DNA from: Macrostomum hystrix
Taxonomy: Eukaryota > Animalia > Platyhelminthes
Direction: 5' to 3'
Length of the DNA: 64,000 nt
Assembly (NCBI GenBank): GCA_950097015.1
Contig: CATNEN010000001.1
Coordinates: 4,898,001 to 4,962,000, forward strand
Part shown: positions 23,952 to 50,532 of the stretch, one piece after another
Layout: every line of letters starts with the position of its first letter
Position numbering within the stretch: the stretch's first letter is position 1
The notes under the pieces: generated by a model
Seen by the model: only the letters and a program-made list of their open reading frames with translations
Databases searched by the model: none
Told to the model about the DNA's origin: nothing
Position numbers and translations under genes: made by a program

Positions 23952-24441
23952 TTAAGTCACGACCGGCTTCAGCATGCTCAGTACAACACTGCCATCTTTC
24001 CCGTCGACGTTTCGATTCGTGAATGTAACGCAGCCGCTGCTGTTAATGCAGGCGGAACCGCCGCCACCACCGATGTGTCCGTAGCCAAGACCAGCTCCGC
24101 CTCCGCTGAAGCCGCCTCCAGCGCCAGGTGCCCCGATCCTGCCGAACGCCTGACGGCCTCCGCCTCCGCCCCCACCGAATCCGCCCCCGCCTCCACCGAA
24201 GTCACCACCGCTGCCGCCGTGAAAGGAGTCGGCCAGACTGCCGACTCGTTCTCCGTATACGCTGCGCCTCGGGTTGAGAGCCTTGCCCAGCCAGCGGCTC
24301 CGCAGCCTCCGTGGTTGCTCATAGATGAAGTGTTATTCGGCTCATTGAAGCCCGGCTTACCACTCATGCCGCCGGAACCAGAGAGCTCCGAAATCGAGCC
24401 TGACGAGTCGGCTCCGCTGGTTGAGCCCTGGCCTGGCAAAC
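23952..24441 (-). pseudogene. Orphan last exon of the PAN + glycine-rich-domain family (copy 1), with a 1-nt frameshift
   Basis: Acceptor CCAG|GT at 24441, then GLPGQG...NHGGCGA. A 1-nt deletion relative to paralogs lies near 24295. The shifted frame continues GKALNPRR...GGFGGGGGG...GAPGAGGGFSGGGAGLG...GSVVLSMLKPVVT*. No upstream exons of its own were found. Confidence 0.8.
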
Positions 24442-24454
24442 CTGGCATTTTGCC

Positions 24455-25240
24455 AGGCCAGGAAGACCAAGAAGACCAAGAAGACTAAGAAGACCAGGAA
24501 GACCAAGAAGACCAGGAAGACCAAGAAGGCCAGGAAGGCCAGGAAGACCAGGAAGACCAAGAAGACCAGGAAGGCCAAGAAGACCAGGAAGACCAAGAAG
24601 ACCAGGAAGACCAAGAAGACCAAGAAGACCAAGAAGGCCAGGAAGACCAAGAAGGCCAGGAAGACCAAGAAGAACAGGAAGGCCAGGAAGGCCAAGAAGA
24701 CCAAGAAGACCAAGAAGACCAGGAAGACCAAGAAGACCAAGAAGACCAAGAAGGCCAGGAAGGCCAAGAAGACCAAGAAGACCAAGAAGACCAGGAAGAC
24801 CAAGAAGACCAAGAAGACCAAGAAGGCCAGGAAGACCAAGAAGGCCAGGAAGACCAAGAAGAACAGGAAGGCCAGGAAGGCCAAGAAGACCAAGAAGACC
24901 AGGAAGGCCAGGAAGACCAAGAAGACCAGGAAGACCAAGAAGACCAGGAAGACCAAGAAGGCCAGGAAGACCAAGAAGAACAGGAAGGCCAGGAAGGCCA
25001 AGAAGACCAAGAAGACCAGGAAGGCCAGGAAGACCAAGAAGACCAGGAAGGCCAGGAAGACCAAGAAGACCAGGAAGACGAAGAAGGCCAGGAAGACCAA
25101 GAAGGCCAGGAAGGCCAGGAAGGCCAAGAAGACCAAGAAGACCAGGAAGGCCAGGAAGGCCAAGAAGACCAAGAAGACCAGGAAGGCCAGGAAGGCCAAG
25201 AAGACCAAGAAGACCAGGAAGGCCAGGAAGGCCAAGAAGA
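24455..25240. repeat. 9-bp variant minisatellite (GAAGACCAA / GAAGACCAG / GAAGGCCAG), ~87 units
   Basis: Direct tandem 9-mers, giving LPG/LLG, KKT/RKA, FLV/FLA and EDQ/EGQ reading frames. Confidence 0.95.
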
Positions 25241-26420
25241 AATTGATTAACCAGAAGAAGTCCATGCAAAACCGTCCATAGGAAGAATAACATTTTGCTG
25301 TAAGTGACACGTGATTAATATATACAAACCTAGGCACTTGTTACACAGTGTTTAAGAAGTGGGAGTCTAAGAAGTTAGGAACCAGGTAAAATCCTCTATC
25401 TAAAATCCTCTCTCGCTTGTATCTCTCTCCTATTTTCAGGTTTTCATAGTGCGCTAAAGCCAGACTCTTCAGTTGCAGTGATCTGTAAATTTAATAAACT
25501 CATAGATTGAGCTGCCAGCCAACTACCAACTCTATATTAGACAGACGATTTCAGTCAGTATAGGCAAGACAGTAGGCCAAATGGCGCCATTTTAATGGAT
25601 CGACAATTTCTATCCTATCTACAAGCTTGTACTAACGTGGACAAAGCCCCCAAAACATGGAGTCTCAAAACGAAATGATCAGACGTATATTTCTAACTGA
25701 AAAAATGTTTTTCTGAAACAGTTACGACTAAAAGGATCATTAAAAATGTATCATTTTTTCTGATAAGAATTTTATTTTATAGGCTTGGACAAACGCATTT
25801 GCTTAATTGCATCTCCAGTGACGGATGCTCTAAAGTCGAGTACATCCGTCCTAATTTAAAGTAGAAAAGCACAGATAATTTAAGTAATATTGAGTTTTCG
25901 TGTTCTCAAAGGCATCAATCAACTTTAGTTGGAGTTTTATCGATAGAATAATTGTACTTTTATCGACCAATCGCATCACGCCACTTTTCTAACCCTCTCT
26001 CCACCCTCCACAGCCACCGCTCCGGGATCGATAATGTACATGTCAACTATTTCAGTTCGACCCACTTCAATGAGCTCAATAAAAATCGATGACTGCACAA
26101 TTAAAGCTTGATATAAAGCTGCTGTAGTCCAATTTTCTGTCCGATGTCTTTAGCATTGGAGAATTGGGGGAATTGGAGAGCGTGTTGGGCATCCATCAAT
26201 ACTTGGAAATGCTGAACTTTTTGGGTCTAGTGAATCTATCGCAGTCCCCTATTGAGTCGAAGCTGACGGCTTGCAAGTCAACTCACAATTAAATTCAAGG
26301 TGCTCGGCTTCATCAAGTTCGTTGGAAATCAAAATCCTCTAGGCATATTGTTCAGGCCGTTAGTCCTTCAAGCTGGAATCGGACCGTGAGTGACTGGGGT
26401 ATCGGTGTTTCTAGACAACT

Positions 26421-27447
26421 GTTTGGTTCAAGGATCGACCAGCTACTGATTTCAGTCGGTTTGGTTCAAGGATCGACCAGCTACTGATTTCAGTCGGTTT
26501 GGGTCGAAGATCCACCAGCTACTGATTTCAGTCGGTTTGGTTCAAGGATCGACCAGCTACTGATTTCAGTCGGTTTGGGTCGAAGATCCACCAGCTACTG
26601 ATTTCAGTCGGTTTGGTTCAAGGATCGACCAGCTACTGATTTCAGTCGGTTTGGATCGAGGATCGACCAGCTACTGATTTCAGTCGGTTTGGTTCAAGGA
26701 TCGACCAGCTACTGATTTCAGTCGGTTTGGTTCAAGGATCGACCAGCTACTGATTTCAGTCGGTTTGGGTCGAAGATCCACCAGCTACTGATTTCAGTCG
26801 GTTTGGTTCAAGGATCGACCAGCTACTGATTTCAGTCGGTTTGGGTCGAAGATCCACCAGCTACTGATTTCAGTCGGTTTGGTTCAAGGATCGACCAGCT
26901 ACTGATTTCAGTCGGTTTGGATCGAGGATCGACCAGCTACTGATTTCAGTCGGTTTGGTTCGAGGATCGACCAGCTACTGATTTCAGTCGGTTTGGTTAA
27001 AGGATCGACCAGCTACTGATTTCAGTCGGTTTGGTTAAAGGATCGACCAGCTACTGATTTCAGTCGGTTTGGATCGAGGATCGACCAGCTACTGATTTCA
27101 GTCGGTTTGGTTCAAGTATCGACCAGCTACTGATTTCAGTCGGTTTGGTTAAAGGATCGACCAGCTACTGATTTCAGTCGGTTTGGTTAAAGGATCGACC
27201 AGCTACTGATTTCAGTCGGTTTGGGTCGAAGATCCACCAGCTACTGATTTCAGTCGGTTTGGTTAAAGGATCGACCAGCTACTGATTTCAGTCGGTTTGG
27301 TTCAAGGATCGACCAGCTACTGATTTCAGTCGGTTTGGTTAAAGGATCGACCAGCTACTGATTTCAGTCGGTTTGGATCGAGGATCGACCAGCTACTGAT
27401 TTCAGTCGGTTTGGATCGAGGATCGACCAGCTACTGATTTCAGTCGG
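26421..27447. repeat. 38-bp minisatellite, ~27 copies
   Basis: Constant CCAGCTACTGATTTCAGTCGGTTTGG plus a 12-bp segment with a few variants. Confidence 0.96.
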
Positions 27448-27669
27448 CTTTGTTCGATAAGTTGACATCCGCTTTCTGAGCTGAGATTTCATTTCCTGTT
27501 AAAATGTTTCAAAATGTAATTAAGGTAGACTGCCGCCTCAAATAGTCGGCGGGCGCATTGGTGACCAAAAAGGGAAGGCCTAGCTTAGATGGCCCGCCTC
27601 GTCCTTGCAGAAAAACAGATTTGTCTTAACAAATTACTTGTAAATTTGAAGATTTGTAAATTTTCTAGT

Positions 27670-29045
27670 TCAGCAATTCGGAGAACTCAACAGCCGGATC
27701 ACCACGCTGCCGTGATCGCCCTCCTCACTGCCGCCTCTTCGGTTCACACAGCCGCTGCCGCCGCAGTTGGAGCCGCCACTTCCAGCTGCTTGACCCTCGC
27801 CGAGGCCCGCGCCACCTCCGCTAAACCCGCCTCCGGCACCTGGGGAGCCGCGGCAGCCGCCACCGTCGCCACCTCCGCCCCCGCCGCCGCCGAATCCACC
27901 GTTGCCACCGTTGCTGTCGCCGCCTCTGCCGCCAAGCCAGCTGTCGTCAAGACTGCCGCCTCGCTCGCCATCATTTGGGCCGCGTCGCGGGTTGACGGCT
28001 TTGCCCAGCCAGCCAGCACCGCAGCCACCGTGGTTGTAAACAGAGCCTGTGTCACTCGGTACATTGAAACCTGCGAGACCATTTATTCCACCGAAGCCAG
28101 TGTAACCATACGTGTTACCAAGGGAGTCTCTCCCGTTTTTTCCGTCTTCTCCTGGAAAACCTAGATCGATAAGTAAGAATACGTATCTTTGAAGACAGTC
28201 CGGCATGTACAGGCCAATCGCATCAGTACCACACTCCACTCACCATTGCGGCTAAAAGAGCCACCACCGCCACCGCCGGCAGCCAGCAGCAGCTGCCTCT
28301 GCGCGGCATCAGCTCTCCACACGAAGCTGCCGCCACCGCCTCCTGGAGCTACGTTGTTCACTGAGACGTCACCGCCCGCCTGTCCGACGACGATGAAAAG
28401 TCGGGTGCCGGCAGTCAGACTGAAGTTTCCAGCAGCGGTGGCTCCGTTGCCGCCCACTGTGCCTTTGAATGAGTTGCTGCCGCCCCTGGCTCCGGCGGCC
28501 TCGATGCGGTAGCAGCCGGTGAGGCCGATCAGCTGCTGCTGCACGGACCCGTTGCTGCCCGAGCTCGAGTCTGAAACACGCAGTGAGCAGTCATGAGTAC
28601 ACCTGCTTACTTGAGCACACCACAAAATGACAATGAGCTCACTTTTGAAGAGTACATTCATTGAATAGCCCCTCTTCCTCAGCAGCTCGTCGAGGTTGTC
28701 CACAGTCCACACCGAGTCGCCGATCTCAGAGCTCAGCACTCTAGTCACGTGACTCTCCGTCGGTCCCAGAGACTTGGACGCTTCGTTGATGACGACGAGC
28801 TGGCAGATGCGTCCGCTCTCTCGAGCGACAGCCACAGCGCAGCCTCTCATTCGACACCTGAGCAGACACTCGGGCACCGATGCCACATTGATCTCGTTGA
28901 TGACGTCACTGCTGACTGTCGTATCGAGCGAGACTGTTTGAAGTGAGCGAACAAGCTTTGCTGGTCCACAGCTGTCAGCTGCAGATGCTTGACCAATATA
29001 TAGAAAGGCAGTGAGACAGTTTACCAAAACAAATTTGGTGTACAT
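27670..29045 (-). CDS. Secreted PAN/apple-like + ALK/LTK-type glycine-rich-domain protein (copy 2, ~406 aa, 3 exons)
   Basis: Exons 29045-28643, 28570-28244 and 28160-27670. Signal peptide MYTKFVLVNCLTAFLYIGQASA. PAN-like SVPECLLRCRMRGC...CQL. GRD motifs GCYRIEAAGARGG, LFIVVGQAGG, GGGGGSFV, LLAAGGGGG, GGFGGGGGG and GAGGGFSGG. No TM or kinase segment. Confidence 0.85.
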
Positions 29046-30012
29046 GTCGAACTGCAAATTGCTGTCTGAAGTTTCCAGCTGCGGTGGCTCCGTTGCCACC
29101 CAGTGTGCCTTTGAATGACTTGCTGCTGAGTTGCTCTAGCGCCTGTCAGTTTGCTGCTTTCAAGCCTATAGTTTTGTTGCTGAATAATTTTAGTGCTTAT
29201 AAAGACCTTGAATGAAGCTCCGTTTCTGCCACTGCTTTTTCAATGCAATGTGCAGACCAACTGTCCACTGTTACTCAGTTTTAGCTGAGCCATCAAAAAT
29301 ATTTATTCTGCTTATTTCATATTCAACGTAGGCGTTAGCTTAAGCATCGCAATAATGGAAATGTAGATTTTTTTCAGCAATAGCTTCCAGTACGCGATAT
29401 TTCGTTTTTCCCCTATGCCTTTTTAAGTGGTAAAAGCCCATTTTCAGTTGTGAAGTGATGAGACAGACGTGGATGAGCAAGATGTGTGGGGGTGCTCCGC
29501 CATAAGACTGCTCCATCGACTAGGGAGAGCCGAACTATCAAGTATATTAAAGTCTTGATAGTTGTGTAAACCTGGCTCCTTGGGATCAACAGCCTTTTTG
29601 GAAGAGGTCTACATCAGGAGCATCAGGTCAGCCAAAATACAGACAGCAATGCGGTCCTCTTCGTAGTTAGGCAGATGATTATAAAATATCCAGAAGAGAA
29701 GCGTATCATACTGGGCCTCCATAACAAACCGGCTAGATTCCATAATTGATGTTCTGTTCTCTATTGAACAGGGAACTCGAGCGTGCTATGTCACTACAAC
29801 TATTTTTAAACAATATTAGTCTACCGAAAAATATGTCAAAGAAATCTGAATTTGTAATAGGCATGGCTCCGTCCGTTCGAAATTAAAAATGTAAATTTTA
29901 TAGAAAATTCCGAAATTTCACGTTTCAAACTGTAGAAGACAAAATCAAACCACTTAATGACCAAAAACTATAGGGAATCCACGAAGCCATAGCAAAGTAT
30001 ATTGCAGAGAAG

Positions 30013-30358
30013 GGGTCGGTGGCAGAGCGGTTAACGCGTTTGGCACTCGCACCAAGGTCCCTAAGTTCGATTACGCGGCGAGGCCACATTCATTTGGGAC
30101 GCAGCCGCGGATAGAAGGCTTGGGGGCTTGCCGTGCAATTTACGCCCCTGAGGCCAACCTCCAAGGCACAGTGAGAGTGTACACTGCCTGACGATGAGAA
30201 AGTCAGGGCAGATGTACACACATGTGTGAGCGTGTGCCTGCGTACGGTATCTGTTTGCGTGTGTGCTCAGGAGTCAGCGAAATGGGCAGAATTGCCTCCT
30301 CGCTGGCTATGGGTCCAGTGTCCCTAAATGATGTACTATTGCCCACAGCCCTCCTGCA

Positions 30359-30395
<37 letters not shown>
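30013..30395 (+). mobile_element. tRNA-derived SINE family B, full-length with (ATT)n tail
   Basis: A-box GGTGGCAGAGCGG, B-box GTTCGATT, a body shared with at least four other copies in the window, and an (ATT)~12 tail. Further fragments lie at ~30730-30860, ~35320-35370 and ~50080-50195. Confidence 0.9.
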
Positions 30396-30398
<3 letters not shown>

Positions 30399-30959
30399 GA
30401 CAGAGATGCAAATTTATAAAAAACAAATGCCCCTAACAATTGTGAAAGCATGTTGTCTTTGCAATTTATCTCACTGTCCTTAAATTATTTGTTCTTTCTT
30501 GTCCTTCCGAAACATAGTTTTTTATATTCCTTGTTTCTTTAATCCATTCGCTTAAAATACTCGTGTTATGTTCACAACAGTTTAAGTATTAGTTTGCAAT
30601 TTCCAAAGTATAACTATTTTTCGAAAATAAAGTCTTCGTTTTTAAAAAACATCAGCGACGATAAAAATGGCGTGCGATTCACGCAAACAACTGTACAACG
30701 TCTGAGAAATAGGTTCGTGGCGGATGTACATGTACACCCGTGTGTGAGTGTACACCCGCGCACAATTTGTGAACGGAATTCGCCAGAACTGTCTCCTGGC
30801 TGGCTGCTGGTCTACTGTCTCTAGACACACTGCCGTGAAGCAAACATTGTTATTATTATTGTTAACAGCTATTGCCAGTTTGTCAAGTAGAATGTCTGTT
30901 ACAGTTAGGCGTTCAGTTACAATTCAATGTGACCATCAGCAAAAATCAGCTGATGCACG

Positions 30960-32418
30960 CAGTAGCTCCAGCTTAACTCTTCCATGCTCATTGTGGGCGT
31001 CGGCGCCGCTGCCACCTATCCAGCCGTCGTCCAGACTGCCGCCTCGCTCTCCGTCGTTGGAGCTACGTCTGGGGTTGACGGACTTGTCCAGCCAGCCAGC
31101 ACCGCAGCCGTCGTGTTTTGATGACGAAACAGTTTTCATTGGTTCATTCGAAGCCAGGTTGTCCATTAGCACAGCCAGTGCTTGCCAGGCTCTGAACAGT
31201 GCCGAGGGAATTGCCGACTAAAGCTGTCCGTGGGAAACGTCAAGGCACGTTTATTTATTGTGGCGCCGTTTAAACTATGTTTAACTATGTTAACTATGTT
31301 CTATGTAACTAAACAATGTTCATGATTGTTAACCATATCTGCGGTACTGTACGTGTTTGCTAAACGAATGTACTTATAGTTTGTAATGTCCACGTGCGGC
31401 ACGTTACTCTGGTTTGTTGCTCTATATGTACATCATGTTGTGGGTGGCACGTGGCCGCCAGGCATGTCCAATTATAATAATATAAAGGGCAGAGTGAGTT
31501 TTTCGGCTGAGCTATCTACTAAAACAAGAGTTTACTTCGGTACAAACGGCACGACATTTATTATATAATATTATAATTGCTTATCTCTTCATTTAAGAAG
31601 GAACTGCAGATTCCAAAAAATGAAACCATCTAAATTTGAACCGTCCGAATTGATAGTGCAGCAGCCAGCAGCAGCCTCTGCGCGCCGTCAGCACTCCACA
31701 CGAAGCTGCCGCCTCCGCCTCCTGGAGCTGCGTTCTCCACGGAGATGCTGCCTCCAGCCTGTCCGACGACGATGAACAGTCGGGTGCCGGCAGTCAGACT
31801 GAAGTTTCCAGCAGCGGTGGCTCCGTTGCCGCCCACTGTGCCCTTGAATGAGTTGCTGCCGCCCCTGGCTCCGGCGGCCTCGATGCGGTAGCAGCCGGTG
31901 AGGCCGATCAGCTGCTGCTGCACGGACCCGTTGCTGCCCGAGCTCGAGTCTGAAACACGCAGTGAGCAGTCATGAGTACACCTGCTTACTTGAGCACACC
32001 ACAAAATGACAATGAGCTCACTTTTGAAGAGTACATTCATTGAGTAGCTCCTCTTCCTCAGCAGCTCGTCGAGGTTGTCCACAGTCCACACCGAGTCGCC
32101 GATCTCAGAGCCAATCACTCTAGTCACGTGACTCTCCGTCGGTCCCGGAGACCTGGACGTGTCGTTGATGACGACGAGCTGGCACATGCGTCCGCTCTAT
32201 CGAGCGACAGCCACAGCGCAGCCTCTCATTCGACACCTGAGCAGACACTCGGGCACCGATGCCACATTGGTCTCGTTGATGACGTCACTGCTGACTGTCG
32301 GATCGAGCAAGACTGCCTGCGTTGCTGTGAGAAATCTTACTGCCCTACAGCTCTCCGCTGCATGCAGCTGAGCCATCGCTAAGAGGACAGCCAGGAAGCT
32401 TATGAAGTTGAGTTTCAT
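30960..32418 (-). pseudogene. PAN + glycine-rich-domain family copy 3, pseudogene
   Basis: Signal peptide MKLNFISFLAVLLAMAQLHA. GAG>TAG nonsense codon at 32199-32197. Exon 2 is truncated after LLLAA (~31660). The exon 3 remnant (~31220-30960) is frameshifted and truncated. Confidence 0.85.
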
Positions 32419-33490
32419 GTGTCGTCTTGAAATGTTTCTACAATGTTTTTTGATGAAAACTATGCAAGTTTTTTACAATGCTTGGGACAGGTTTTAGCTT
32501 TTTTTCAAGACTGATATCCTTGATTTTGGCTGCACCTGTCACACGCGTCAATCACGAACTGTTTGAATGCATTGGCAAATTGAAATCGGATTATATTTTC
32601 TTGAGGGAGTGTTTGTCCTGTCAACAGGGAGTTGATGGCTTGAGTTTTGAGTTGATGCCAGCATGGATTGTTGTCTGCAGTAGCATTCTACGATTTTAGT
32701 AAGTTCGGATTGACGTGTTGCTTTTGGTGGTGCTAATAAATTATGCGTTGGTGAGTGGCAGAGAGCTGTTAACGCTTTCACGTCTCACACTAAAGTCCCT
32801 GCTATTGCTATTTGAATAGCTTATTGTCTTTAGGAGTGACATATTGCTATGAGCTAGGAATTGGAGTGATTTCTAGGAACGCGCATCCTATACTAGAAGC
32901 GAAATTTACTCCTAACCTCCTAACTCTTTGTGAAGAGTTGAAGTCCTGAATTTGACTCTTAAAAATTAGTTTTTTTTTAAAAGAGTCTTGACTTCTTTTT
33001 TAACATTTCGATCTTGATACATTTTGTACCAAACCCGCAATGTGCCAAACCATTCGAAATCCGCAACCAAAAATACGAGTACGAGCGCATATCGAATTCG
33101 TCAGAGCAGCTACCTGCATCCACTTTAACGCTGCTCTCGCGTCTTTCTTTTCAAAGTGAAAAGTCTTTATTGTGCGGCCTAACTTACACTAGCTCATTAG
33201 AACACGTTACTTACTACTACAAGTATTAGTATTGCCTTAGGAGTACTCCGTAGTAGTAACGCCTGGTTCAGTGATTACTCTAAGTTCACTTGGTACTGTA
33301 GGCCGGGGGCCCCGACCTGACCGCAGTCCCTACAAGTGCATACTCTCAAAGCTGTTATTTACAGAATCAAGGCGATCAAATTTATTCATCTGGGAACAAA
33401 AAAATTTATCGTTTAGTGAAACTCAAGAAATGTCCATTTTTATTGAAATATCTCATCAAAAAACACTCGTGTACGAACTTTTTTATATAA

Positions 33491-34989
33491 TTAAAAGCAT
33501 GAGGACCAGGTGCTCAGCAGCATCAATGTGACACTGCCCTGCTTGCTCCAAACATTTCCTCCGGTGATGGAGACGCAGTCACTGCCATCGATGCAGACGG
33601 AGCCGCCGCCACCAGCTGAGTGTCCGTCGCCGAGGCCCGCACCACCGCCGCTGAAGCCACCGCCGGCACCAGGTGCACCTCGCCTGCCATCGCTATTGTC
33701 TCCGCCTCCACCGCCTCCACCGAAACCGCCGTCTCCGCCGCCGTCGTCTCCACCGGAGCCGCCAAGCCAGTTGTCGTCCAGACTGCCGCCTCGCTCGCCA
33801 TCGCTGGAGCTCCGTCTGGAGTTGACGGCTTTGCCCAGCCAGCCAGCTCCGCAGCCTCCGTGGGTAAAATATGGCCAAGTTTCGCTGGGAACATTGAAGC
33901 CCGGCTGCCCGACAATGCCTCCAAAGCCTATTAAATCGCTGCTAGCACCAACTGAGTTTGATCCATCACTTCCGCTTTCTCCAGGCAAACCTGCAAATTG
34001 CAATGGAACAAAGATCACCGCGGTAAAAAGATCATGACAATGAACTCTAGAAAATAATTAAAATCTGAGAAAAATAAAATCTTTAAACTAGATAAACAGT
34101 TTTTTAAGCGAATATCAACTCCGTTTGCTACAGAAGCACGGACTTTGGCACAGGTGTTGTTAAAAGTGTCCGAATCAACGAGTTGAATCCCACCGTCTCG
34201 AGTGCTCGCGCTTCCACCGCCCCCGCCGGCAGCCAGCAGCAGCTGCATATTCGCGCCGTCAGCTATCCACACGAAGCTGCCGCCTCCGCCTCCTGGAGCT
34301 GCGTTCTCCACGGAGACGCTGCCTCCAGCCTGTCCGACGACGATGAAAAGTCGGGTGCCGGCAGTCAGACTGAAGTTTCCAGCAGCGGTGGCTCCGTTGC
34401 CGCCCACTGTGCCTTTGAATGAGTTGCTGCCGCCCCTGGCTCCGGCGGCCTCGATGCGGTAGCAGCCGGTGAGGCCGATCAGCTGCTGCTGCACGGACCC
34501 GTTGCTGCCCGAGCTCGAGTCTGAAACACGCAGTGAGCAGTCATGAGTACACCTGCTTACTTGAGCACACCACAAAATGACAATGAGCTCACTTTTGAAG
34601 AGTACATTAATTGAGTAGCTCCTCTTCCTCAGCAGCTCGTCGAGGTTGTCCACAGTCCACACCGAGTCGCCGATCTCAGAGCCAATCACTCTAGTCACGT
34701 GACTCTCCGTCGGTCCCGGAGACTTGGACGCTTCGTTGATGACGACGAGCTGGCAGATGCGTCCGCTCTCTCGAGCGACAGCCACAGCGCAGCCTCTCAT
34801 TCGACACCTGAGCAGACAGTCGGGCACCGATGCCACATTGGTCTCGTTGATGACGTCACTGCTGACTGTCAGATTCAGCGAGATGACCCGGGAGCGGATC
34901 AATCTCATTGATATACAGCTGCTCTCGGTAGGTTGCAATGAGGCCATCAAGGCAGCCATTGCGAATAAGCTGAATGCAAGAAAGAGCAT
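33491..34989 (-). CDS. Secreted PAN/apple-like + ALK/LTK-type glycine-rich-domain protein (copy 4, ~407 aa, 3 exons)
   Basis: Exons 34989-34593, 34520-34194 and 33990-33491. Signal peptide MLFLAFSLFAMAALMASLQP. Same PAN and GRD motifs as copy 2. The second donor is the weaker GTGGGA. Confidence 0.85.
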
Positions 34990-37900: not shown

Positions 37901-37963
<63 letters not shown>

Positions 37964-37975
37964 GTCTGTCTCACT
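37660..37975. repeat. (TC)n/(TCTG)n microsatellite and low-complexity tract
   Basis: Direct inspection. Confidence 0.9.
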
Positions 37976-38493
37976 TGAATATCTCTCGCTAGCCCAATCA
38001 GTTCATGACAATAATAATTCTCCCTTTGCAAATGCGTTTCCCAAGCAGTTGATTCTCCCAGCTAGTCTAACATTTCAGCACGCAACTCCCTTCAGTCCAA
38101 AGAGTTCATCAAATGTACGAAAGTATTAACGAATGCAATATTGTCTGCAGCTGTTGGCAGACCGTTGCTAAAGTCACAAATCTCCCAATCGTGCAATTCT
38201 GATTGGAGAAAATCAAAGGAAGCACAATAATAGCACATAGAAGCCAGACAGTGCAGACACTTCTCAGTACATCTACAGTACAGTACTGTACAGTACTAAA
38301 AGACTTAGTACAACTTTTCAGTCCGCGGACTGTCCTGTCTACTCCTAGACTCATCAGCGATACGTCAGATGGCTTTGATTTTTATTCATTTTCATTCATA
38401 TTCATATGGTGAACTTTCACAAAAACCGGTTTGGGAGCTTTCGTGAAGTAGTCAGTTGGGAAAAATTCCTTAGTTCAAAGTAATTTCTTAGTA

Positions 38494-40127
38494 TACCTTT
38501 TCAACTTCGGATTCGTCAAAAGTGACTTCGAATTCGTCAGCCTATATAAAACTATAGAGCGCTCAAGGGAATGAGAAGGGGTGTCTATGGTGTAATTTCT
38601 TTCGAGAAAGTGACTTCGAATTCGTCAAAGTAAGTGAAATTCGTCAGTGCAACCAGTATACTTCGTATATTGTCAATCGTGAAGTAAAACAGCAACTAAA
38701 CAAACAAGACAGGAAAACAGACGCATAAAATCACGCTTTAAAGTCGCTTGAACAGGTTAACACGCTGTAGTCAGTCCAAAATGTATCCGTGTGCCAGACA
38801 CCGCGGTCCGTACCGAAGTGTGAATTCGTGCCATTGTCGGCATTTCTCCTCCGTGATCGCAACCATCGCAGCTTCCACTTCTCGACTCAAAATGCGAAGA
38901 CGCCGGTTCTGAAGTGTCTCACCTGCTGCTACAGCCGCCTGACGATCATGCACTTCAAAGACAACTTCAGGGTCGGTCATGCGCCGTTTCAGGGCCGCCT
39001 TCATGCAAGAAATTGCCATTTCAGTGGCGTTCAAGAAAGGCGAGTAAGGTGGAAGAAACTGAAGCCTTTGTTCAGGACGCCCAAAATTCACGACTCCATG
39101 TGCCCTGGCGTTGTCAGCAAGTACCATGAACTCGTCATCAACAAGGGTCCCGACTTCAATCATAAACTCACGAAACCTCTCTGCTGTAAAGCCACCAACA
39201 AAGATGCGGTGGTGGACCAGGCCCAACTGTGGGCTAACAGCAAGTGCTACCGTCAGATTGTGCCCACGCTGCGAATTCGCAATCATTACTGCGCGATTGC
39301 CAAAATCCGCCCATCCTTTAGTTCGTGACGTCCATAGGTTGCACCCACACTCATCTACGTAGATTAAATTCCTTACAAACAGTCCAGTTTCTAGCATCCA
39401 GGTCATGTGTAGAAATCTAACTTCTTTTGTCACGTCACTATTCCAATCTCCGTGAACCCGCCGTACATCTTTCAATGTAATGCACAAAGTCCCGTCAAGC
39501 CGACGACTAATTGCCTGCGTTGTCACGACAGGAGCAGCAGGAAAGTCTGCCACAAGCTTTTGCTGCATTTCTTTTAGCGTTACAGTCGGCTTCTCTTCCA
39601 CGTACCTCGTCAATGCCTCCTCAGTGAACTTTGGTCTCACCACACCTCCACGCGCGTTAAGATCAATCCTATCTTCATCTACATATCTTCTGATAATGTC
39701 ATTGGCAGTCGTCCTCTTGATGTCCAGTTCAACTGCGAGAAGTCTCCAGTCTCGTCCCTGTTGAAAACATCGCACGAGTCTAGAGCGATCCACAGACGAA
39801 ATTCTCATATATGGCATCTCTGACAACAATAAGAGCAGGAAATGAGTAATGAAAGATTGCTGTCTTATTTTACATTGACGAATTTCACTCACTTTCTCGC
39901 TTAAATTTACACTGGGCACTTTGCTTTCTTGCCATAGACGAAGCGAAGACACTTTCTGATCAGGCTGCTTTTGCACTGACGAATTTCACTTACTTTGACG
40001 AATTCGAAGTCACTTTCTCGAAAGAAATTACCATAGACACCCCTTCTCATTCCCTTGAGCGCTCTATAGTTTTATATAGGCTGACGAATTCGAAGTCACT
40101 TTGGACGAATCCGAAGTTGAAAAGGTA
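38494..40127 (-). mobile_element. Full-length Tc1/mariner-IS630 superfamily DNA transposon (~1.63 kb) with ~158-bp TIRs
   Basis: TIRs 38494-38652 and 39971-40127 are nearly identical. TA flanks both ends. Each TIR carries two AAGTGACTTCGAATTCGTCA direct repeats. Confidence 0.95.
38771..39817 (-). CDS. Transposase (HTH + DDE), 348 aa, intact
   Basis: ATG at 39817. N-terminal HTH (LAVELDIKRTTANDIIRRY). Catalytic motifs IYVDECG, LADNARAH and FLPPYSPFLNATE. Confidence 0.93.
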   Translation of the reverse strand: MPYMRISSVDRSRLVRCFQQGRDWRLLAVELDIKRTTANDIIRRYVDEDRIDLNARGGVVRPKFTEEALTRYVEEKPTVTLKEMQQKLVADFPAAPVVTTQAISRRLDGTLCITLKDVRRVHGDWNSDVTKEVRFLHMTWMLETGLFVRNLIYVDECGCNLWTSRTKGWADFGNRAVMIANSQRGHNLTVALAVSPQLGLVHHRIFVGGFTAERFREFMIEVGTLVDDEFMVLADNARAHGVVNFGRPEQRLQFLPPYSPFLNATEMAISCMKAALKRRMTDPEVVFEVHDRQAAVAAGETLQNRRLRILSREVEAAMVAITEEKCRQWHEFTLRYGPRCLAHGYILD

Positions 40128-41998: not shown

Positions 41999-43311
41999 AT
42001 GACCGAGAAGTCAGTCAGCTTGTCGCTAACCGGCGGACCGCCGTGGGGCTTCCGGCTGCGCGGCGGTCCGGCGTCCGGCGGCCTCAGGGTCAGCCGGGTC
42101 CGGCGACGCAGTCCAGCCACGGCTGGCGGTCTGCGCGAAGGCGACCTACTATTGAGTGTCAATTCGCTGCCGGTGGCTGGCAGGACCTACGCCTTCGTGA
42201 TGGAGTACGCCGAGAGGCAGCGAATCCTTCAAATGGAGGTTCGCCGATTAGTCGGTCCCGAGGGCACCCTGCTAGCCGCATCGGCGACTTGGGCCTCCGA
42301 GGAAGACGACGAAGACGAGGAGGCGCTGATGGCTTTGGAGGTGGCGCCGGAGCCCGAGCCGCCGCTCCAGGAGCTGCAAGTGGCTGAGCTACAGCTAGCC
42401 CCGTCTCGTCCTCTGCCGCTTCAGCAGCAGCCGTTCAGCAGCTTCGACGAGGACACAGTGATCCCGGCCGATCCCGAGGTGCGCCCGGTGCCGCTGAGCA
42501 AGCTCATCACCGAGGCGGAGCCAGAGCCGACGCCGCCGCGGTCGCCAGTGAAAAAGTACGCCGACTCGGCTTATTTCGACGCGTCGGACGCCAGCTACCC
42601 GACTGTAGAGGAGCAGAAGGAGATGGCCAAACGAGTGGCTGAGACTCTAACAGATGTGCGCAACCGAGGCAGTCGCGGCGCCAGCATGTTCGAGAAGCGA
42701 CGCGAGCGCGCCGCGAAGTACACGCTGGAGGGCCCCGAGCCAGGAGATAATGACTTCCCGGGCGCTGGTGCAATCGACGAAATGATTGACACGTCGGTCG
42801 GCGGTTCAGTAGACGAGGGTGGAACTGTTCGAGTTCCGCTTCCGACTAAGACTGGGCCGCCCCCAGCGCCGCCACCACCGCCGCCTCCTTTTGCACCGCC
42901 GCCTCCACCGCCGCCCCATCTGCAAGGCGGCTTTCCTCTCTTTGGCCTCGGAAGCGGCATCGGTGTTGGGAAGCGGCCAGAGCCACCGCCGCCGAAGACC
43001 GTGGCCGAGTTTGTTGAACGCGAAATGCGTTCAGCGCCCAAGCTGACGCATCGCGACTACGATCCGAAAAAAGCGTTCGACATTGCCTCCGCCCTACACT
43101 CCAGCTCCGGCAAGGCCGGGCAGATGTTTCAAAAGCGGCGTCAGCGCGCGCTGAAATTCACCATGGAGAGCGACGGTCGGGTGGAACCGCCGGCGTCGCA
43201 GCTCAAGCCGCTGATGGTGTCAGGCGCGATGAAACCGCTCGGCGTTGGCGGCAGCGACGCCAGTATGGCTGCCAAGATTCAAAGACTTCAAAATTGTCTG
43301 GGCGGAGGTGG

Positions 43312-43342
<31 letters not shown>

Positions 43343-43384
43343 AGCGGCGGCGGCGGCGGCGTTGGTGGATTATCGGATCTGTGA
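41999..43384 (+). CDS. PDZ-domain synaptopodin-2/myopodin-like (calsarcin-motif) muscle protein, single exon, 461 aa
   Basis: N-terminal PDZ (LTGGPPWGFRLRGG...GLREGDLLLSVN). Two synaptopodin/myozenin-type motifs, SRGASMFEKRRERAAKY and GKAGQMFQKRRQRALKF. Polyproline tract. Confidence 0.85.
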
Positions 43385-46803: not shown

Positions 46804-48270
46804 TCACACACACACGGCTCCTGTCGAATTCAGGACCACTCGGCCGTGCAACTCAAAGTTAGCGCCAGCGGCGGTGACGCAACCGAAGCCGCTGCAGAAT
46901 GAGCCGCCGCCGCCTCCGCCACTGTCTACGGTAGACCCTGTGCCACCGCCGCTGAAGCCGCCACCACCGCCGGCACTACCGGCACTGCCAAAGGCGCAGC
47001 TACCTCCGCCGGCGCCGCCTCCACCGAAGCCGCCATCGCCGGTGCTGCAATCGAAGCATTTGACACCCCCGAGCCATCCGCCGCAGCGGCCCAGCCCCGG
47101 TTGTCCAGAATTTTGTACGCTAGACTGAACGCCGGTGCCGTTCCAGCCAGCTCCGGGGCCGCCGCAGCCGAACGCAGGAGCATCTGAGTTCTGGTTGATC
47201 GCAACCTGGCCCGGCTGTCCAGCATTACCGCCCCAGCCGATAAAGAACGGATCTGACGTATTTGAGGCCGTTCCGTTGGTACCGCTGCTCCCATCCATGC
47301 CTAGAGCAAAATTGGCTTAGTACATCGTGAATGTAGACTTGGACTGCCATCGCTACGTGACTCAACCCCTACTCAAAATACTGAACTCACCGCTGCGAGT
47401 AGAGCCCATTCCGCCACCTCCGCCGGCCGCCAAGAGCAACCGTACACTGGTGTTGCTAGCGTACACGAAGCTGCCACCGCCGCCGCCTGTACCGTAGTTG
47501 CACGTGGTGGTCTCGCCAGCCTGGCCAATCACAATTTCAAGTCGGGTGCCTGCGGAGAGAAGGAAGCTGCCAGCGGCTGATGCCCCCCTGCCTGCTCTGA
47601 TTGCTACTGCAGAGAGCACAGAGCCCCCAGAGGCTCCGAAGGCCTGGATGTGGTAGCAGCCGGTGAAATTGATGGTTAAATTTCGGACGACTCCAAGCTT
47701 GCCAGTGCTGCTGTCTGGAGTAAAAAGTTTGATTTTCTGGCATTTCTGTCAAGATAAGCCTTGATTATGAATAATTTGTCACTCACTTCGAAACTCATGA
47801 AACACCGAAGGAATAGAAGGCATTTTGAAATCCGTCTTCCACAGCCTTGTGGTGCCATTGGCAGTCAGCAGCAGATTCGTCGAGTTGCTGTCCCCAGGCC
47901 TCTGATGGTCAGCAGGGATGTCCTTGATGACCGCCAAGTGGCAGACTTGCCTGAGCTCATTCACGACCGCGACAATGCAGCCTCTCTGCTCACACTTTGC
48001 CAGGCACTCGCCCTCTGAGCGGATACCGGATTCGTTGAGCAGGCTGCAGTTCAACGAGCCGTCAATCAGGATGGAACCGTTGGCAACGAGTTCGTAATTG
48101 CGACTTGTTAAACCGATCGAATTGCCAGCAACCGGCGCTAAAAACAAATGCAGAGTAAGAACAGTGGCTTAAACATGAGCAGACAAAAATTGAGCACAGA
48201 TTTGAGAACTACTGCAACACTTACCGACTGTGCGAACTAACAGCAGAACAAAGACTGCTTTGAAATTCAT
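46804..48270 (-). CDS. Secreted PAN/apple-like + ALK/LTK-type glycine-rich-domain protein (copy 5, divergent, ~405 aa, 4 exons)
   Basis: Exons 48270-48225, 48137-47787, 47714-47391 and 47300-46804 in one frame. Signal peptide; ECLAKCEQRGC...CHL; GCYHIQAFGASGG, LEIVIGQAG, LLLAAGGGGG and GGFGGGG. Confidence 0.85.
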
Positions 48271-48402
48271 ATTTAACTACTATTTATTTACGCTGTCCTG
48301 GCTGGGCGGGAGCGACTGGGCGATTGTTCGGAATATTTTATGCAATTTTCACTGTCCAATAGAATGCAGCAAGCCCCTGCTGCTTATCGGGTAGGGGAAT
48401 AA

Positions 48403-48416
48403 GTTTCCTTGGCAAC
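48403..48416. promoter_or_regulatory. RFX X-box-like motif GTTTCCTTGGCAAC ~135 bp upstream of the copy 5 ATG
   Basis: Imperfect palindrome fitting GTTNCC-NN-GGCAAC. A GC box lies at ~48304. Confidence 0.4.
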
Positions 48417-48999
48417 GCAAAAGCAAACGAACGATTCCTACCCGAGCTTTGTTTCGCGAGTCTCCGATCCTGACAGTGCTGAAAAAACTCGTTCTATCGA
48501 AATTCACTTTGCATTGGTCTCCACATTGCAAGTGATTCTGTTCATGATCATGCTGTCAGTCAATCATTGATAACGATTTTTCAAGTTGCCACACTGCGAC
48601 ATCCATAGCAGTTGGGGGACACTGAAATTTTAGCCGGATGACTCGGGGCAGCGAGTCGAATCTACTCAACTTTTTTACTCGTAGATTCAGCCAAATTGCA
48701 TTGTGCTTTAAGATTTTTTTCCAGTGTGCTTTTTTATTTTGGTTCAATATTTTTTTAGCAAACTCTTCACACTTCCCGAAGCAACAGGTATGTTATCGAA
48801 AATCGCTTGCAATACGAAATCACTTCTACGAGTATCTTATACCTATCAGGCTAAGAACTAATGAAGATAATTTTAATTTATTCACTAACTCCCGCCAGCG
48901 TAGATGATACCATCCAGCTGGCTATATTGCCGTTAAAATTTTGTCGAATGAATTGTAAGAGCTCCAGATGCCGCTGCCATGGCAGGAGGATTTCAACAC

Positions 49000-49620
49000 C
49001 GGTTCATTGTGATGTTGTGCAGTTCGCTCGCACCTGACATGGCGTTGTGAGTCTCAAGGATCGCCACTGAGGTGGAATCACAGAATCGTGCCAACAAACA
49101 TTTTCGGCATCCCGAAGAATGCGGGCACCACGCAGACAGAGGAGCCTCACGGAATTTCGCTTATATCCTGCGCTGCGAAGCTTTTCAACCGGCTTCAATT
49201 TGGCTTCAACAATTTCAGTCTGTGCCTGTGCCCAGTGCAGTATTTTTGGCGGCGTTATCTTTGTCTTCGCTGACGTCCTCCCGGCTATCGACTCGGTGGA
49301 GACCACTCCGTGCCTATAAGTTACCGCTGCAACTGATCTCTGCTATCTTGACAATCAAGACACCACTGCTGCGGTTGCAATAGACGGACCATCGGACCTG
49401 TTCTGCACGACCTCCGGGGTGCTGCAGGGTGATACACTCGCGCCTTTTCTCTTCGTGTGGGCGACACCCCGAAAACTGACGCGGACGACCAACGGCTGCT
49501 TGACGGCCTCACTATCAATGAAAAGAAGACCGAGGTGCGCGCAGTGGCACACGACCTTCCTGTGGAGATACAGGTGGACCTGTGTCAGACGTGGGCGATG
49601 ACATGACGAGACCTGGGCGC
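49000..49620 (+). mobile_element. Non-LTR retrotransposon (LINE) reverse transcriptase remnant
   Basis: Fragments HGISLISCAAKLFNRL and GVLQGDTLAPFLF match LINE RT motifs. Heavily deleted. Confidence 0.75.
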
Positions 49621-49724
49621 GAATTGACCCGGCCTTCTGTACTGCTGAATCAGCTAGGGACTTAATTGAAATTGAAATATAATTTATGATGATTTAATCG
49701 CCTAAGCTATATCTGCTACAATTG

Positions 49725-50532
49725 CGCTCCAGCGGCTACTTGTTGAGCCCTGAAGCTGCTGCTACCGCTGCCGCCGCCGCCACCAAAGCCGCCAGAAGCG
49801 CCATTTGCATCAGCGCCAACTCCAGCTGCACCACCGATTTAACCATCAGCCAAACTGCCTACATGGTTGTCGTCATGATTCTTAATTCTCGGTGTCAGTA
49901 TCGACAGGAACGTTTGAATCCTGGCAGACCGTCGTAACACCGACGCCAGTCTTCTTGGCAGACAAGTTAAAAAACGTTAAAAACTGTGCCTGTCAGGAAA
50001 CTCCTGTTCAATTATCAGCATGGAACATATATAGATTATTATGAATGGAGATTGCATGCCGACGTGTCTGACACATTTAAATTGGGGCGCAGCAGTGTAA
50101 AGTAGACAGGGGATGTGCAGTTGTATTTAATTACACCCATGAGGGCCAAATTTCAAGGTAACAGTAATATTGTAGACTTGCCTGACGATGATAGCTATTC
50201 AACTCAATAAAAACGGACATTAATAAATAATATTAAAAAGCAATAACGAAAGGTAGATCGGAGCGAATTGATTTGGTCGAATCGTTAAAATCGCCGTTGC
50301 TGACGATATCACCGCCGCCAACGGCACCGACGGTGTTGAGAGCCACCGAGCCGCCCGCCTGGCCGACAATGATGGTGCACGCTCTCAGATTAAAGTGACC
50401 CCGCGCTACTATGGAGCCGTTTTCCGCCGGTGGTGCCAACGTTGACGCTGTTTCCAACTCTGGCACCGATGGCCTGAATCCAAAGCAGGTGGACACGGGT
50501 ATCAAGTAAAAATCAAGGCTTGATTTTGCCAT
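49725..50532 (-). pseudogene. Highly decayed glycine-rich-domain family copy 6
   Basis: RGHFNLRACTIIVGQAGGSVALNTVGAVGGG (exon-2-like, ~50300-50480) and GGFGGGGG (last-exon-like, ~49730-49930). A SINE B fragment lies between them. Confidence 0.65.

What the first reader, a model, noticed from the sequence alone, without database searches (positions are those of the whole stretch)
23952..50532. Tandem family of secreted, kinase-less 'ALK/LTK ectodomain-like' proteins (signal peptide + PAN/apple + glycine-rich domain) undergoing birth and death
Seen: six same-strand paralogs, three intact (~405-407 aa) and three broken. Intact copies have a signal peptide, a CxxxCxxxxC...C PAN-like module and a complete glycine-rich domain, and stop with no TM or kinase. 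Intron positions and phases are shared. Established: this motif series (YRIEAxGAxGG, LxIxVGQxG, GGGGGSFV, LLxAxGGGG, GGFGGGG, GxGGGxSGG) is the ligand-binding TNF-like/polyglycine-helix domain of ALK/LTK receptor kinases, and PAN modules bind proteins or glycans. Inference: a lineage-expanded secreted system, such as soluble ALK-ligand decoys or mucus, adhesion or immune-recognition proteins. I do not recognise this architecture as a characterised family.
Basis: partly seen in the sequence, partly recalled or inferred. Interest (0 to 1): 0.85.

Follow-up and report, generated by a model that had tools for sequence, protein, structure and literature searches.

The report
Secreted kinase-less ALK-type glycine-rich gene cluster
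This stretch of the flatworm Macrostomum hystrix holds three working and three decayed copies of a gene for a secreted protein that joins a small PAN/apple head to the complete ligand-binding module of the ALK/LTK cancer receptors without any membrane anchor or kinase; it is one cluster of a family of about 150 such genes that nobody has studied.

Summary
On the minus strand lie three intact genes (B 406 aa, D 407 aa, E 405 aa), three decayed copies (A, C, F) and a 19-codon remnant.

- **Domains:** each intact gene encodes a hydrophobic leader, a PAN/apple-fold module and a full ALK/LTK-type glycine-rich (TG) domain, then stops.
- **GRD evidence:** the GRD exon passes Pfam PF12810. A model of a 419-aa M. 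lignano homologue matches LTK/ALK at Z 29-30 (2 Å rmsd, about 225 residues).
- **PAN evidence:** a model of copy D's own first exon matches only PAN/apple domains.
- **No receptor parts:** no transmembrane segment or kinase exon was found.
- **Family size:** the genome is M. hystrix. It holds at least 109 GRD exons and 147 PAN-like exons, about 166 loci.
- **Range:** by sequence the head is found only in Macrostomum.
- **Evolution:** B and D are old paralogues (exon 3 dS 1.3) under purifying selection. A recent 640-nt gene-conversion tract is shared with pseudogene C.

Function is inferred, not shown. Soluble extracellular binding or recognition proteins are most likely; ALK-ligand decoys are unlikely. 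Expression could not be tested, because no RNA run was listed.

The scan had already found this family on other DNA of this genome (s1-846605, s1-332718). The papers I searched describe nothing like it.

The parts
23970..24439 (-). Copy A: orphan exon 3 (C-terminal half of the GRD), pseudogene with one frameshift near 24290. No exon 1 or 2 lies upstream; a tandem array starts at 24458.
   Evidence: tblastn gives two HSPs in different frames, 51% and 69% identical to D exon 3. Translations.
27670..28160 (-). Copy B exon 3 (GRD C-terminal half, stop codon included).
   Evidence: 64% aa identity to D exon 3, dS 1.27, dN/dS 0.21.
28244..28570 (-). Copy B exon 2 (GRD N-terminal half).
   Evidence: PF12810 scores 40.2 bits against a cut-off of 24.5. 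Splice sites.
28643..29045 (-). Copy B exon 1: signal peptide (ending ..GQASA|ADSC) plus the PAN/apple module.
29068..29124 (-). 19-codon remnant of an exon 2, 23 nt upstream of B's ATG. It is a scar of an earlier duplication.
   Evidence: 89% identical to D and B exon 2 residues 31-49.
30999..31148 (-). Copy C exon-3 fragment (residues 32-81 only), followed by unrelated sequence and a stop.
31657..31949 (-). Copy C exon 2, truncated after residue 97. The LLxAAGGGG motif and the donor site are lost.
32022..32418 (-). Copy C exon 1, with an in-frame TAG replacing the Glu codon of ..VAR-E-SGR.. .
33491..33990 (-). Copy D exon 3 (GRD C-terminal half, TAA stop at 33493-33491).
34194..34520 (-). 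Copy D exon 2 (GRD N-terminal half).
   Evidence: PF12810 scores 37.3 bits against a cut-off of 24.5, profile positions 7-113.
34593..34989 (-). Copy D exon 1: signal peptide plus the PAN/apple module.
   Evidence: The AF2 model of this exon has pLDDT 81. Its Foldseek hits ranked 1-27 are all PAN/apple domains.
34230..34870 (-). Gene-conversion tract, given in copy D coordinates. The same tract lies at about 28280-28920 in B and 31660-32300 in C. It covers mid exon 1, intron 1 and most of exon 2.
   Evidence: 95-97% DNA identity over 643 columns. The 72-nt intron is 100% identical in all three copies. The flanks are 49-57% and 54-67% identical. dS is 0.02 in the tract and 1.27 in exon 3.
46804..47300 (-). 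Copy E exon 4 (GRD C-terminal half, TGA stop).
47391..47714 (-). Copy E exon 3 (GRD N-terminal half).
   Evidence: PF12810 scores 30.0 bits against a cut-off of 24.5.
47787..48137 (-). Copy E exon 2 (PAN/apple module, five N-glycosylation sequons).
   Evidence: PAN_1 scores 13.6 bits, below its cut-off. It aligns with the family's Cys core. Sequons counted.
48225..48270 (-). Copy E exon 1 (signal peptide, MNFKAVFVLLLVRTV), followed by an 87-nt GT-AG intron.
49725..49898 (-). Copy F exon-3-like remnant, with an in-frame stop.
50311..50529 (-). Copy F exon-2-like remnant. It is degenerate: the YRIEA and GGGGGSF motifs are lost.
   Evidence: 33-34% identical to D and B exon 2.

Best explanation
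**What it is.** The region is one local cluster of a Macrostomum-specific family of about 150 genes. Each intact gene encodes a protein of about 405 aa with three parts:
- a cleavable signal peptide;
- a disulphide-rich PAN/apple module of about 100 aa;
- a complete ALK/LTK-type TG domain, that is, a TNF-like beta-sandwich wrapped around a lattice of polyglycine-II helices.
The protein ends a few residues after the last strand of that domain, so it has no membrane anchor and no kinase.

**How it most likely works (inferred).** It is a soluble, glycosylated extracellular binding protein. The more variable PAN head supplies glycan or protein recognition. The better conserved, rigid GRD supplies a second binding or scaffolding surface. 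The large set of paralogues then gives the worm a diversified set of recognition or coating molecules for its surface, mucus or gut, for example against microbes.

**How the cluster evolves.** It evolves by tandem duplication, decay of copies and local gene conversion, under purifying selection on the intact genes.

**Shown:** the gene structure, both folds, the missing transmembrane segment and kinase, the family size, the conversion tract and the purifying selection.
**Inferred:** secretion, what is bound, and the biological role.
For: - **Gene models and lesions:**. Intron 1 is confirmed by the insertion against M. lignano proteins.
- **GRD by sequence:** PF12810 above its cut-off in B, D and E. 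A family profile hits only LTK (1e-8), SCD-2 (4e-6) and ALK (8e-6) in the PDB.
- **GRD by fold:** the AF2 model of M. lignano homologue P0016 has pLDDT above 90 across the GRD. Foldseek E is 1e-10 to ALK/LTK. VIA-align gives Z 29-30, rmsd about 2 Å, 221-229 residues aligned and 31-37% identity, covering ALK 678-986.
- **PAN:** in copy D's exon-1 model, Foldseek hits ranked 1-27 are all PAN/apple domains. Z is 5-5.8 on the full model. The Cys core C-x3-C-x4-C-x11-C is invariant. A paralogous M. lignano module passes Pfam PAN_1.
- **No transmembrane segment or kinase:** hydropathy; no kinase-like match in the window; 12 of 13 paralogues stop 0-7 codons after the GRD.
- **Family size:** 109 GRD exons and 147 head exons. 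84 GRD exons have a head exon 124-1952 nt upstream on the same strand. The three-part order recurs in most of the 20 loci fetched.
- **Selection:** dN/dS is 0.2-0.67 in all exon comparisons.
- **Age of the lineages:** M. lignano sequences interleave with this genome's copies. The B/C/D clade has an M. lignano sister at 99% support.
- **Secretory hints:** several N-x-S/T sequons and many cysteines.
Against: - No expression data could be obtained. No RNA run was listed, so transcription, splicing and the 3' ends rest on sequence and on M. lignano gene models.
- No signal-peptide predictor was available. Secretion rests on hydropathy and A-x-A-like cleavage motifs.
- The window's own copies do not reach the Pfam PAN threshold.
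- The full-length fold was predicted for an M. lignano homologue, not for a window protein, because the spliced window protein was not assembled.
- Nothing measured here bears on what the proteins bind. The head is only moderately more diverged than the GRD: 35-55% against 44-61% identity to D.
- dN/dS gives no sign of diversifying selection.
Confidence: 0.55

Rival explanations
1. Reproductive proteins. The family encodes seminal-fluid, sperm-surface or egg-coat and shell proteins, which often form large, fast-turning tandem families in Macrostomum.
For: The family is secreted, lineage-restricted and tandemly expanded, with many dead copies. Macrostomum is known for rapidly evolving reproduction-related genes (title and abstract of PMC7336406).
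Against: dN/dS is 0.2-0.67, which is purifying rather than rapid. Several lineages are shared with M. lignano. No GRD, PAN or glycine-rich term occurs in the held supplements of the prostate screen, the three-species RNA-seq paper or the positional RNA-seq paper. That is weak evidence, because those tables may not list Pfam names.
Confidence: 0.15
2. Soluble decoys or modulators of ALK/LTK-type signalling. The free GRD would capture the ligand of a flatworm ALK-like receptor.
For: The GRD matches the whole ligand-binding TG domain of ALK/LTK, including ALK 678-986.
Against: About 150 diverged paralogues is hard to square with a decoy for one ligand. Among 109 GRD exons, only one lies within 60 kb upstream of a scored tyrosine-kinase exon on the same strand. 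That gene ends in a stop, and an unrelated ING/PHD gene lies between the two. MAM domains occur only in one unrelated array. The PAN head has no counterpart in ALK. Caveat: only 130 of 862 kinase candidates were scored, so an ALK-like receptor is not excluded.
Confidence: 0.05
3. Structural secretion. The proteins are bulk components of mucus, rhabdites, adhesive or another extracellular matrix. The rigid glycine lattice would act as a building block rather than a recognition surface.
For: 32-37% glycine in the C-terminal half, many cysteines and glycosylation sequons. Distant fold relatives are phage fibre and tail-tip proteins, Z about 9.
Against: The proteins are small, globular and two-domain, with no long repeats. 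No family motif was found among the peptides in the held (truncated) supplements of the M. lignano adhesive-footprint study. High paralogue diversity is not expected for a bulk material.
Confidence: 0.15
4. Mostly non-functional DNA. The family would be a decaying or selfishly amplified repeat with no organismal role.
For: Half of the copies in this window are dead. Tandem arrays, a DDE transposase and RT fragments lie among them.
Against: The three intact copies keep open frames, splice sites and stops. dN/dS is well below 1 even at dS above 1. Orthologous lineages persist in M. lignano.
Confidence: 0.05

Closest known systems
TG (TNF-like + glycine-rich) ligand-binding domain of the ALK/LTK receptor tyrosine kinases (PDB 7NX0, 7NX1, 7NWZ, 7N00, 7LRZ; C. 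elegans SCD-2 7LIR)
   Same: The whole domain matches: Z 29-30, rmsd about 2 Å, 221-229 aligned residues and 31-37% identity, spanning ALK 678-986. Pfam PF12810 is matched. A family profile hits only these chains in the PDB.
   Different: There is no MAM, LDLa or EGF-like module, no transmembrane helix and no kinase. A PAN/apple head sits in front instead. There are about 150 copies instead of one or two. No ALKAL, Jeb or HEN-1-type ligand is known here. Whether the family descends from an ALK-like gene or from an older free GRD is not resolved.
Kinase-less GRD proteins of bacteria, phages and other eukaryotes (PF12810 'glycine-rich protein'; Monosiga brevicollis MONBRDRAFT_33536 with five GRDs; Branchiostoma belcheri RING/B-box + GRD proteins)
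   Same: A stand-alone GRD outside any kinase, and detectable by sequence. Bacterial and metagenomic hits reach E 1e-9 to 1e-16. Amphioxus reaches 8e-46 and Monosiga 7e-26 against an M. lignano GRD. The nearest ESM Atlas clusters are bacterial and phage PF12810 families.
   Different: Those proteins carry bacterial sorting tags or Ig-like domains, tandem GRDs with EGF, or TRIM-type N-termini. None of the listed hits pairs the GRD with a PAN/apple head. In the exon-2 tree the Macrostomum sequences group apart from them, at 82% support.
PAN/apple domains (HGF N-domain, plasminogen PAp, factor XI apple, Sarcocystis lectin SML-2, leech antiplatelet protein)
   Same: The same fold for the head and the same kind of Cys core. 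Some of these domains bind heparin or galactose, according to the titles of their PDB entries.
   Different: Sequence similarity is below Pfam's cut-off in the window's copies. By sequence this head occurs only in Macrostomum: 17 hits among 1.8 billion representatives, 16 of them M. lignano and one an unnamed 592-nt ENA contig.
Expanded families of secreted invertebrate recognition proteins, such as snail FREPs and amphioxus VCBPs (comparison from general knowledge)
   Same: A signal peptide plus two extracellular binding-type domains, large tandem families, and birth, death and gene conversion.
   Different: The domains are unrelated. No immune induction, binding or somatic diversification has been shown here, and dN/dS shows no diversifying selection.

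Membership tests
ALK/LTK-type glycine-rich (TG) domain, Pfam PF12810 | Match to the curated profile above its gathering score | tested here: met
   GRD N-half exons score B 40.2, D 37.3 and E 30.0 bits against a cut-off of 24.5. The C-terminal-half exons alone give no hit. Full-length M. lignano homologues align over profile positions 7-203 of 243, at 21-24 bits.
ALK/LTK-type glycine-rich (TG) domain, Pfam PF12810 | TNF-like beta-sandwich enclosing a polyglycine-II helix lattice (complete TG fold) | tested here: met
   Tested on the M. lignano homologue P0016, whose C-terminal half is 59% identical to D exon 3 in the alignment. Z 29-30, rmsd 1.9-2.2 Å, 221-229 residues, ALK 678-986. The spliced window protein itself was not assembled or folded.
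ALK/LTK-type glycine-rich (TG) domain, Pfam PF12810 | Sequence homology to solved ALK/LTK GRDs | tested here: met
   The profile of alignment A1 hits LTK at 1e-8, SCD-2 at 3.7e-6 and ALK at 8e-6, and no other PDB chain.
ALK/LTK receptor tyrosine kinases | Transmembrane helix and cytoplasmic tyrosine-kinase domain downstream of the GRD | tested here: not met
   A stop codon follows directly after the GRD in B, D and E, and in 12 of 13 paralogues. There is no transmembrane-strength segment beyond the leader. No PF07714 hit lies in the window or within 260 kb. No kinase-like tblastn hit lies in the window.
ALK/LTK receptor tyrosine kinases | MAM / LDLa modules before the GRD and an EGF-like module after it | tested here: not met
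   Pfam finds none in the exon translations. MAM hits in the genome are confined to one array at C38:5.25-5.29 Mb.
PAN/apple domain (Pfam PAN_1 and relatives) | Match to a curated PAN profile above its cut-off | tested here: not met
   D and B give no hit. E scores 13.6 bits against 21.4. A paralogous module inside M. lignano P0121 does pass, at 23.5 bits. UniProt names several homologues 'Apple domain-containing protein'.
PAN/apple domain (Pfam PAN_1 and relatives) | PAN/apple fold (helix packed on a curved beta-sheet, disulphide core) | tested here: met
   The model of D exon 1 has pLDDT 81, with the core above 90. Its Foldseek hits ranked 1-27 are HGF N-domain and plasminogen; further down come factor XI apple, the SML-2 lectin and MANEC. 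Probability is 0.92-1.0 and E is 0.009-0.1. Z is 5.0-5.8 for residues 40-140 of P0016. These Z values are modest.
PAN/apple domain (Pfam PAN_1 and relatives) | Conserved cysteine core | tested here: met
   C58 (nearly invariant), C62, C67 and C79 of D form C-x3-C-x4-C-x11-C, conserved in 29 family members. An upstream Cys is present in most.
Secreted (classical pathway) protein | N-terminal cleavable signal peptide and no other membrane anchor | tested here: inconclusive
   The leaders are hydrophobic, with 19-mer Kyte-Doolittle means of 1.55-1.95. B and C have ASA|A- and LHA|A-type sites. No second hydrophobic segment exists. No dedicated predictor or experiment was available.

The most novel reading that the evidence does not exclude
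The ALK/LTK ligand-binding module works in Macrostomum as an autonomous secreted binding domain. Joined to a variable PAN head, its roughly 150 paralogues would form a previously unrecognised diversified extracellular recognition repertoire (innate immune or mucosal). That would also give a handle on what the GRD did before, or apart from, its fusion to a kinase.
Probability: 0.25. Interest if true: 0.75.

Novelty: new variant of a known kind. Interest (0 to 1): 0.55.

Why it matters
The glycine-rich TG domain is known functionally only as the cytokine-binding part of ALK and LTK, two receptors of medical importance. Its polyglycine-helix lattice is one of the oddest folds in animal receptors.

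A free-living flatworm that makes this module as a stand-alone secreted protein, in about 150 versions behind a PAN/apple head, offers two things. It is a natural experiment on what the module can bind without a kinase. It is also a tractable system, since RNAi and in situ methods exist for the sister species M. lignano.

There is a practical point too. Dozens of these M. lignano proteins carry the automatic name 'receptor protein-tyrosine kinase' in UniProt, although they have no kinase domain.

Tried and rejected
- **RNA evidence.** The look-up of sequencing runs listed no run for 27600-35200, so read laying could not be used. Expression and splicing remain untested.
- **Literature.** Eight searches found nothing on this family. 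They covered Macrostomum with glycine-rich, ALK, PAN/apple and signal peptide; PF12810; and ALK GRD with bacteria. The held supplements of five Macrostomum papers contain no GRD or PAN term and no family peptide motif. Several of those files were cut when stored.
- **Looking for a true ALK-like receptor.** I compared the places of GRD, MAM and tyrosine-kinase exons by eye. The single candidate pair, C38:10780800 and C38:10795239, turned out to be an ordinary family member ending in a stop, then an ING/PHD gene, then an unrelated kinase. This is inconclusive, because only 130 of 862 kinase candidates were scored.
- **Placing ALK in the tree.** No ALK or LTK sequence could be obtained under a tool id. 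The long-protein search returned amphioxus, Monosiga and chimeric M. lignano models, but no ALK. So the question of whether these GRDs are closer to ALK or to bacterial GRDs is left open. I dropped an early impression that bacterial GRDs are closer, because the search excluded ALK by length.
- **M. lignano models named 'kinase'.** P0122, P0137 and P0142 are chimeric gene models. P0142's Ser/Thr kinase lies about 2,000 residues away from its GRD. They do not show a GRD-kinase fusion.
- **Positive selection.** It was not found. The only ratio above 1 (10.5 nonsynonymous against 1.5 synonymous differences inside the conversion tract) rests on too few changes to interpret.

Full report
**What is there.**
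The window is C1:4898001-4962000 of a 220,453,370-base, 42-contig genome whose longest contig is 35,345,953 bases. These figures equal those published for Macrostomum hystrix (PMC10468722).

Three copies are intact:
- B: 29045-28643 / 28570-28244 / 28160-27670, 406 aa.
- D: 34989-34593 / 34520-34194 / 33990-33491, 407 aa.
- E: 48270-48225 / 48137-47787 / 47714-47391 / 47300-46804, 405 aa.
All introns are GT-AG. The intron between head and GRD is phase 1 and 72 nt long in B, C, D and E. The intron in the middle of the GRD is also phase 1. E has one more intron inside its signal peptide.

Read straight through, D's intron 1 adds 24 residues. These form an insertion against every M. lignano homologue, which read ..F-K-N-S-S.. 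exactly as the spliced junction would.

The other three copies are dead:
- A is an orphan exon 3 with a frameshift.
- C has a TAG in exon 1, has lost the end of exon 2, and keeps only 50 residues of exon 3.
- F is two degenerate pieces.

Lengths come from exon coordinates. Searches and folds used single exons by reference, the in-frame read-through of D (window:34195-34989:-), or full-length M. lignano homologues returned by the tools.

**Domains.**
The GRD N-half exon of B, D and E passes Pfam PF12810 (ALK_LTK_GRD) at 40.2, 37.3 and 30.0 bits against a cut-off of 24.5. Full-length M. lignano homologues align over profile positions 7-203. A profile of the family hits LTK (1e-8), C. elegans SCD-2 (4e-6) and ALK (8e-6) in the PDB, and nothing else.

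An AlphaFold model of the 419-aa homologue P0016 has pLDDT above 90 through the GRD. Foldseek gives E 1e-10 to ALK/LTK TG domains. VIA-align gives Z 29-30, rmsd about 2 Å, 221-229 residues and 31-37% identity, covering ALK 678-986, which is the whole ligand-binding supradomain. The next matches are phage fibre and tail-tip proteins at Z 9.

The head does not reach Pfam's PAN cut-off in the window's copies. However, a model of D's own exon 1 (pLDDT 81) finds PAN/apple domains in every Foldseek hit from rank 1 to 27 (HGF N-domain, plasminogen), and further down factor XI apple, a Sarcocystis lectin and MANEC. Its Cys core C-x3-C-x4-C-x11-C is conserved in 29 family members. A paralogous M. lignano module passes PAN_1.

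The only hydrophobic segments of membrane strength are the N-terminal leaders. The proteins carry several N-glycosylation sequons and 10-15 cysteines.

The frame stops a few codons after the last GRD strand in B, D and E, and in 12 of 13 paralogues checked. No kinase-like sequence lies in the window.

**Family size and range.**
The genome holds at least 109 PF12810 exon matches and 147 matches to D's head exon. 84 of the GRD exons have a head exon 124-1952 nt upstream on the same strand. Merged, this gives about 166 loci, two thirds of them on contig C1, in many clusters.

Most of the 20 loci I fetched show the same order of head, GRD half and GRD half.

By sequence the head is found only in Macrostomum: 17 hits among 1.8 billion cluster representatives, 16 from M. 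lignano and one from an unnamed 592-nt ENA contig.

M. lignano has dozens of homologues in UniProt under automatic names: 'Apple domain-containing protein', 'receptor protein-tyrosine kinase' and 'PE-PGRS family protein'. The long ones are chimeric gene models.

**Evolution of this cluster.**
B, C and D share a 640-nt core running from mid exon 1 through intron 1 to near the end of exon 2. It is 95-97% identical, and the intron is 100% identical. The 5' ends are 49-57% identical and exon 3 is 54-67% identical.

Between B and D, dS is 0.02 in the 3' part of exon 1, 0.17 in exon 2 and 1.27 in exon 3.

All exon comparisons among B, D and E give dN/dS of 0.2-0.67, which is purifying selection.

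In a tree of the GRD N-half (104 columns, quick search):
- The Macrostomum sequences group together, at 82% support.
- B, C and D form a clade (95%) whose sister is an M. lignano sequence (99%).
- Sequences of the two species interleave, beside species-specific bursts.

Several lineages therefore predate the split of the two species. The family turns over by duplication and decay.

**Relation to ALK and to other GRD proteins.**
The GRD is not confined to ALK/LTK. It also occurs in:
- bacterial proteins with sorting tags;
- phage and bacterial clusters;
- a Monosiga protein with five GRDs;
- amphioxus RING/B-box proteins with several GRDs.

None of the listed hits pairs the GRD with a PAN head. 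I could not place ALK in the tree, because no ALK sequence was available under a tool id. The origin of the flatworm family is therefore open.

I also looked for a true GRD-bearing receptor kinase. The only GRD exon within 60 kb upstream of a scored tyrosine-kinase exon belongs to an ordinary family member that ends in a stop, with an ING/PHD gene in between. MAM domains occur only in one unrelated array. This does not exclude an ALK-like gene, since only 130 of 862 kinase candidates were scored.

**What it most likely does.**
The anatomy is shown: a secretory leader, a PAN/apple head and a complete TG domain, with nothing after it. The function is inferred.

Some PAN/apple domains bind glycans or proteins. 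In ALK/LTK the TG domain is a rigid ligand-binding body. A large, diverged, purifying-selected set of small two-domain secreted proteins fits a role as soluble extracellular binding or recognition molecules of the surface, mucus or gut. I put about 0.3-0.35 on this role, and 0.9 on the structural description.

The rivals are:
- reproductive proteins (0.15);
- bulk structural secretion (0.15);
- ALK-ligand decoys (0.05);
- mostly non-functional DNA (0.05).

The remaining probability stays open.

No RNA run was listed for this stretch. Tissue, induction and even transcription are therefore untested.

**Novelty.**
Eight literature searches and five sets of supplements gave nothing on this family.

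Earlier agents of this scan met the same family at two other places in this genome. They reached the same description and the same count of about 150 genes (s1-846605, s1-332718). I reached both independently before reading those notes.

Both domains are known, and the sequences are public but unstudied. The architecture and the scale of the expansion are new. I therefore rate it as a new variant of a known kind, of moderate interest.

Noticed in passing
window 24458-25240: Tandem array with a 9-nt-based unit (periods 27 and 36, CCAAGAAGA-like, 22-29 copies), directly upstream of dead copy A. The long 'KTKKTRK' and 'LLGLPG' ORFs across it are artefacts of the repeat.
   Followed up: partly
window 26421-27455: Minisatellite of 38 nt x 27 copies (93% matches), lying between copies A and B.
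   Followed up: no
window 38774-39976 (-): Intact 401-aa ORF with a DDE_3 transposase domain (57.9 bits) and weak HTH matches. A DNA transposon sits inside the cluster, between D and E.
   Followed up: partly
window 41999-43384 (+): Single-exon 461-aa ORF with an N-terminal PDZ domain (36.6 bits), a weak calsarcin-like stretch, a proline run and a C-terminal poly-glycine run. It is an unrelated gene on the opposite strand, in the middle of the cluster.
   Followed up: partly
window about 49000-49600 (+): Reverse-transcriptase-like fragments between E and F. One ORF contains 'LQGDTLAPFLF', and there is a tblastn match to the RT part of M. lignano model P0137.
   Followed up: no
window 666-2194; 4687-6433; 14367-16176: Other large tandem arrays: a purine-rich 18-20-nt unit x 75; a 33-nt unit x 52 at 95% identity; and a 21-nt (7-codon) unit x 40-odd, which may be coding.
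   Followed up: no
M. lignano proteins P0004-P0014, P0121, P0126 and others (UniProt): Dozens of kinase-less family members are automatically named 'receptor protein-tyrosine kinase', apparently because of the GRD alone. Others are named 'PE-PGRS family protein'. The long models (P0121, P0136, P0137, P0142) fuse family members to IFT140, RT or a Ser/Thr kinase, and look chimeric.
   Followed up: partly
L003:780-2108 (G000:C38:10780779-10782107): The best-scoring PF12810 exon of the genome (53 bits) belongs to a two-exon GRD gene with no head-exon match reported upstream. An ING/PHD-finger gene lies about 5 kb downstream.
   Followed up: partly
P0141 (Monosiga brevicollis), P0135, P0143 and P0150 (Branchiostoma belcheri), P0139 and P0144 (EukProt): Other eukaryotes have non-kinase proteins with five or more tandem GRDs. 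In amphioxus these sit behind RING/B-box (TRIM-like) domains.
   Followed up: partly
G000 contig C1: About two thirds of all family loci lie on one 27.6-Mb contig. Dense clusters sit at 2.0-2.1, 8.0-8.7, 9.1-9.6, 13.1-13.9 and 14.3 Mb.
   Followed up: partly
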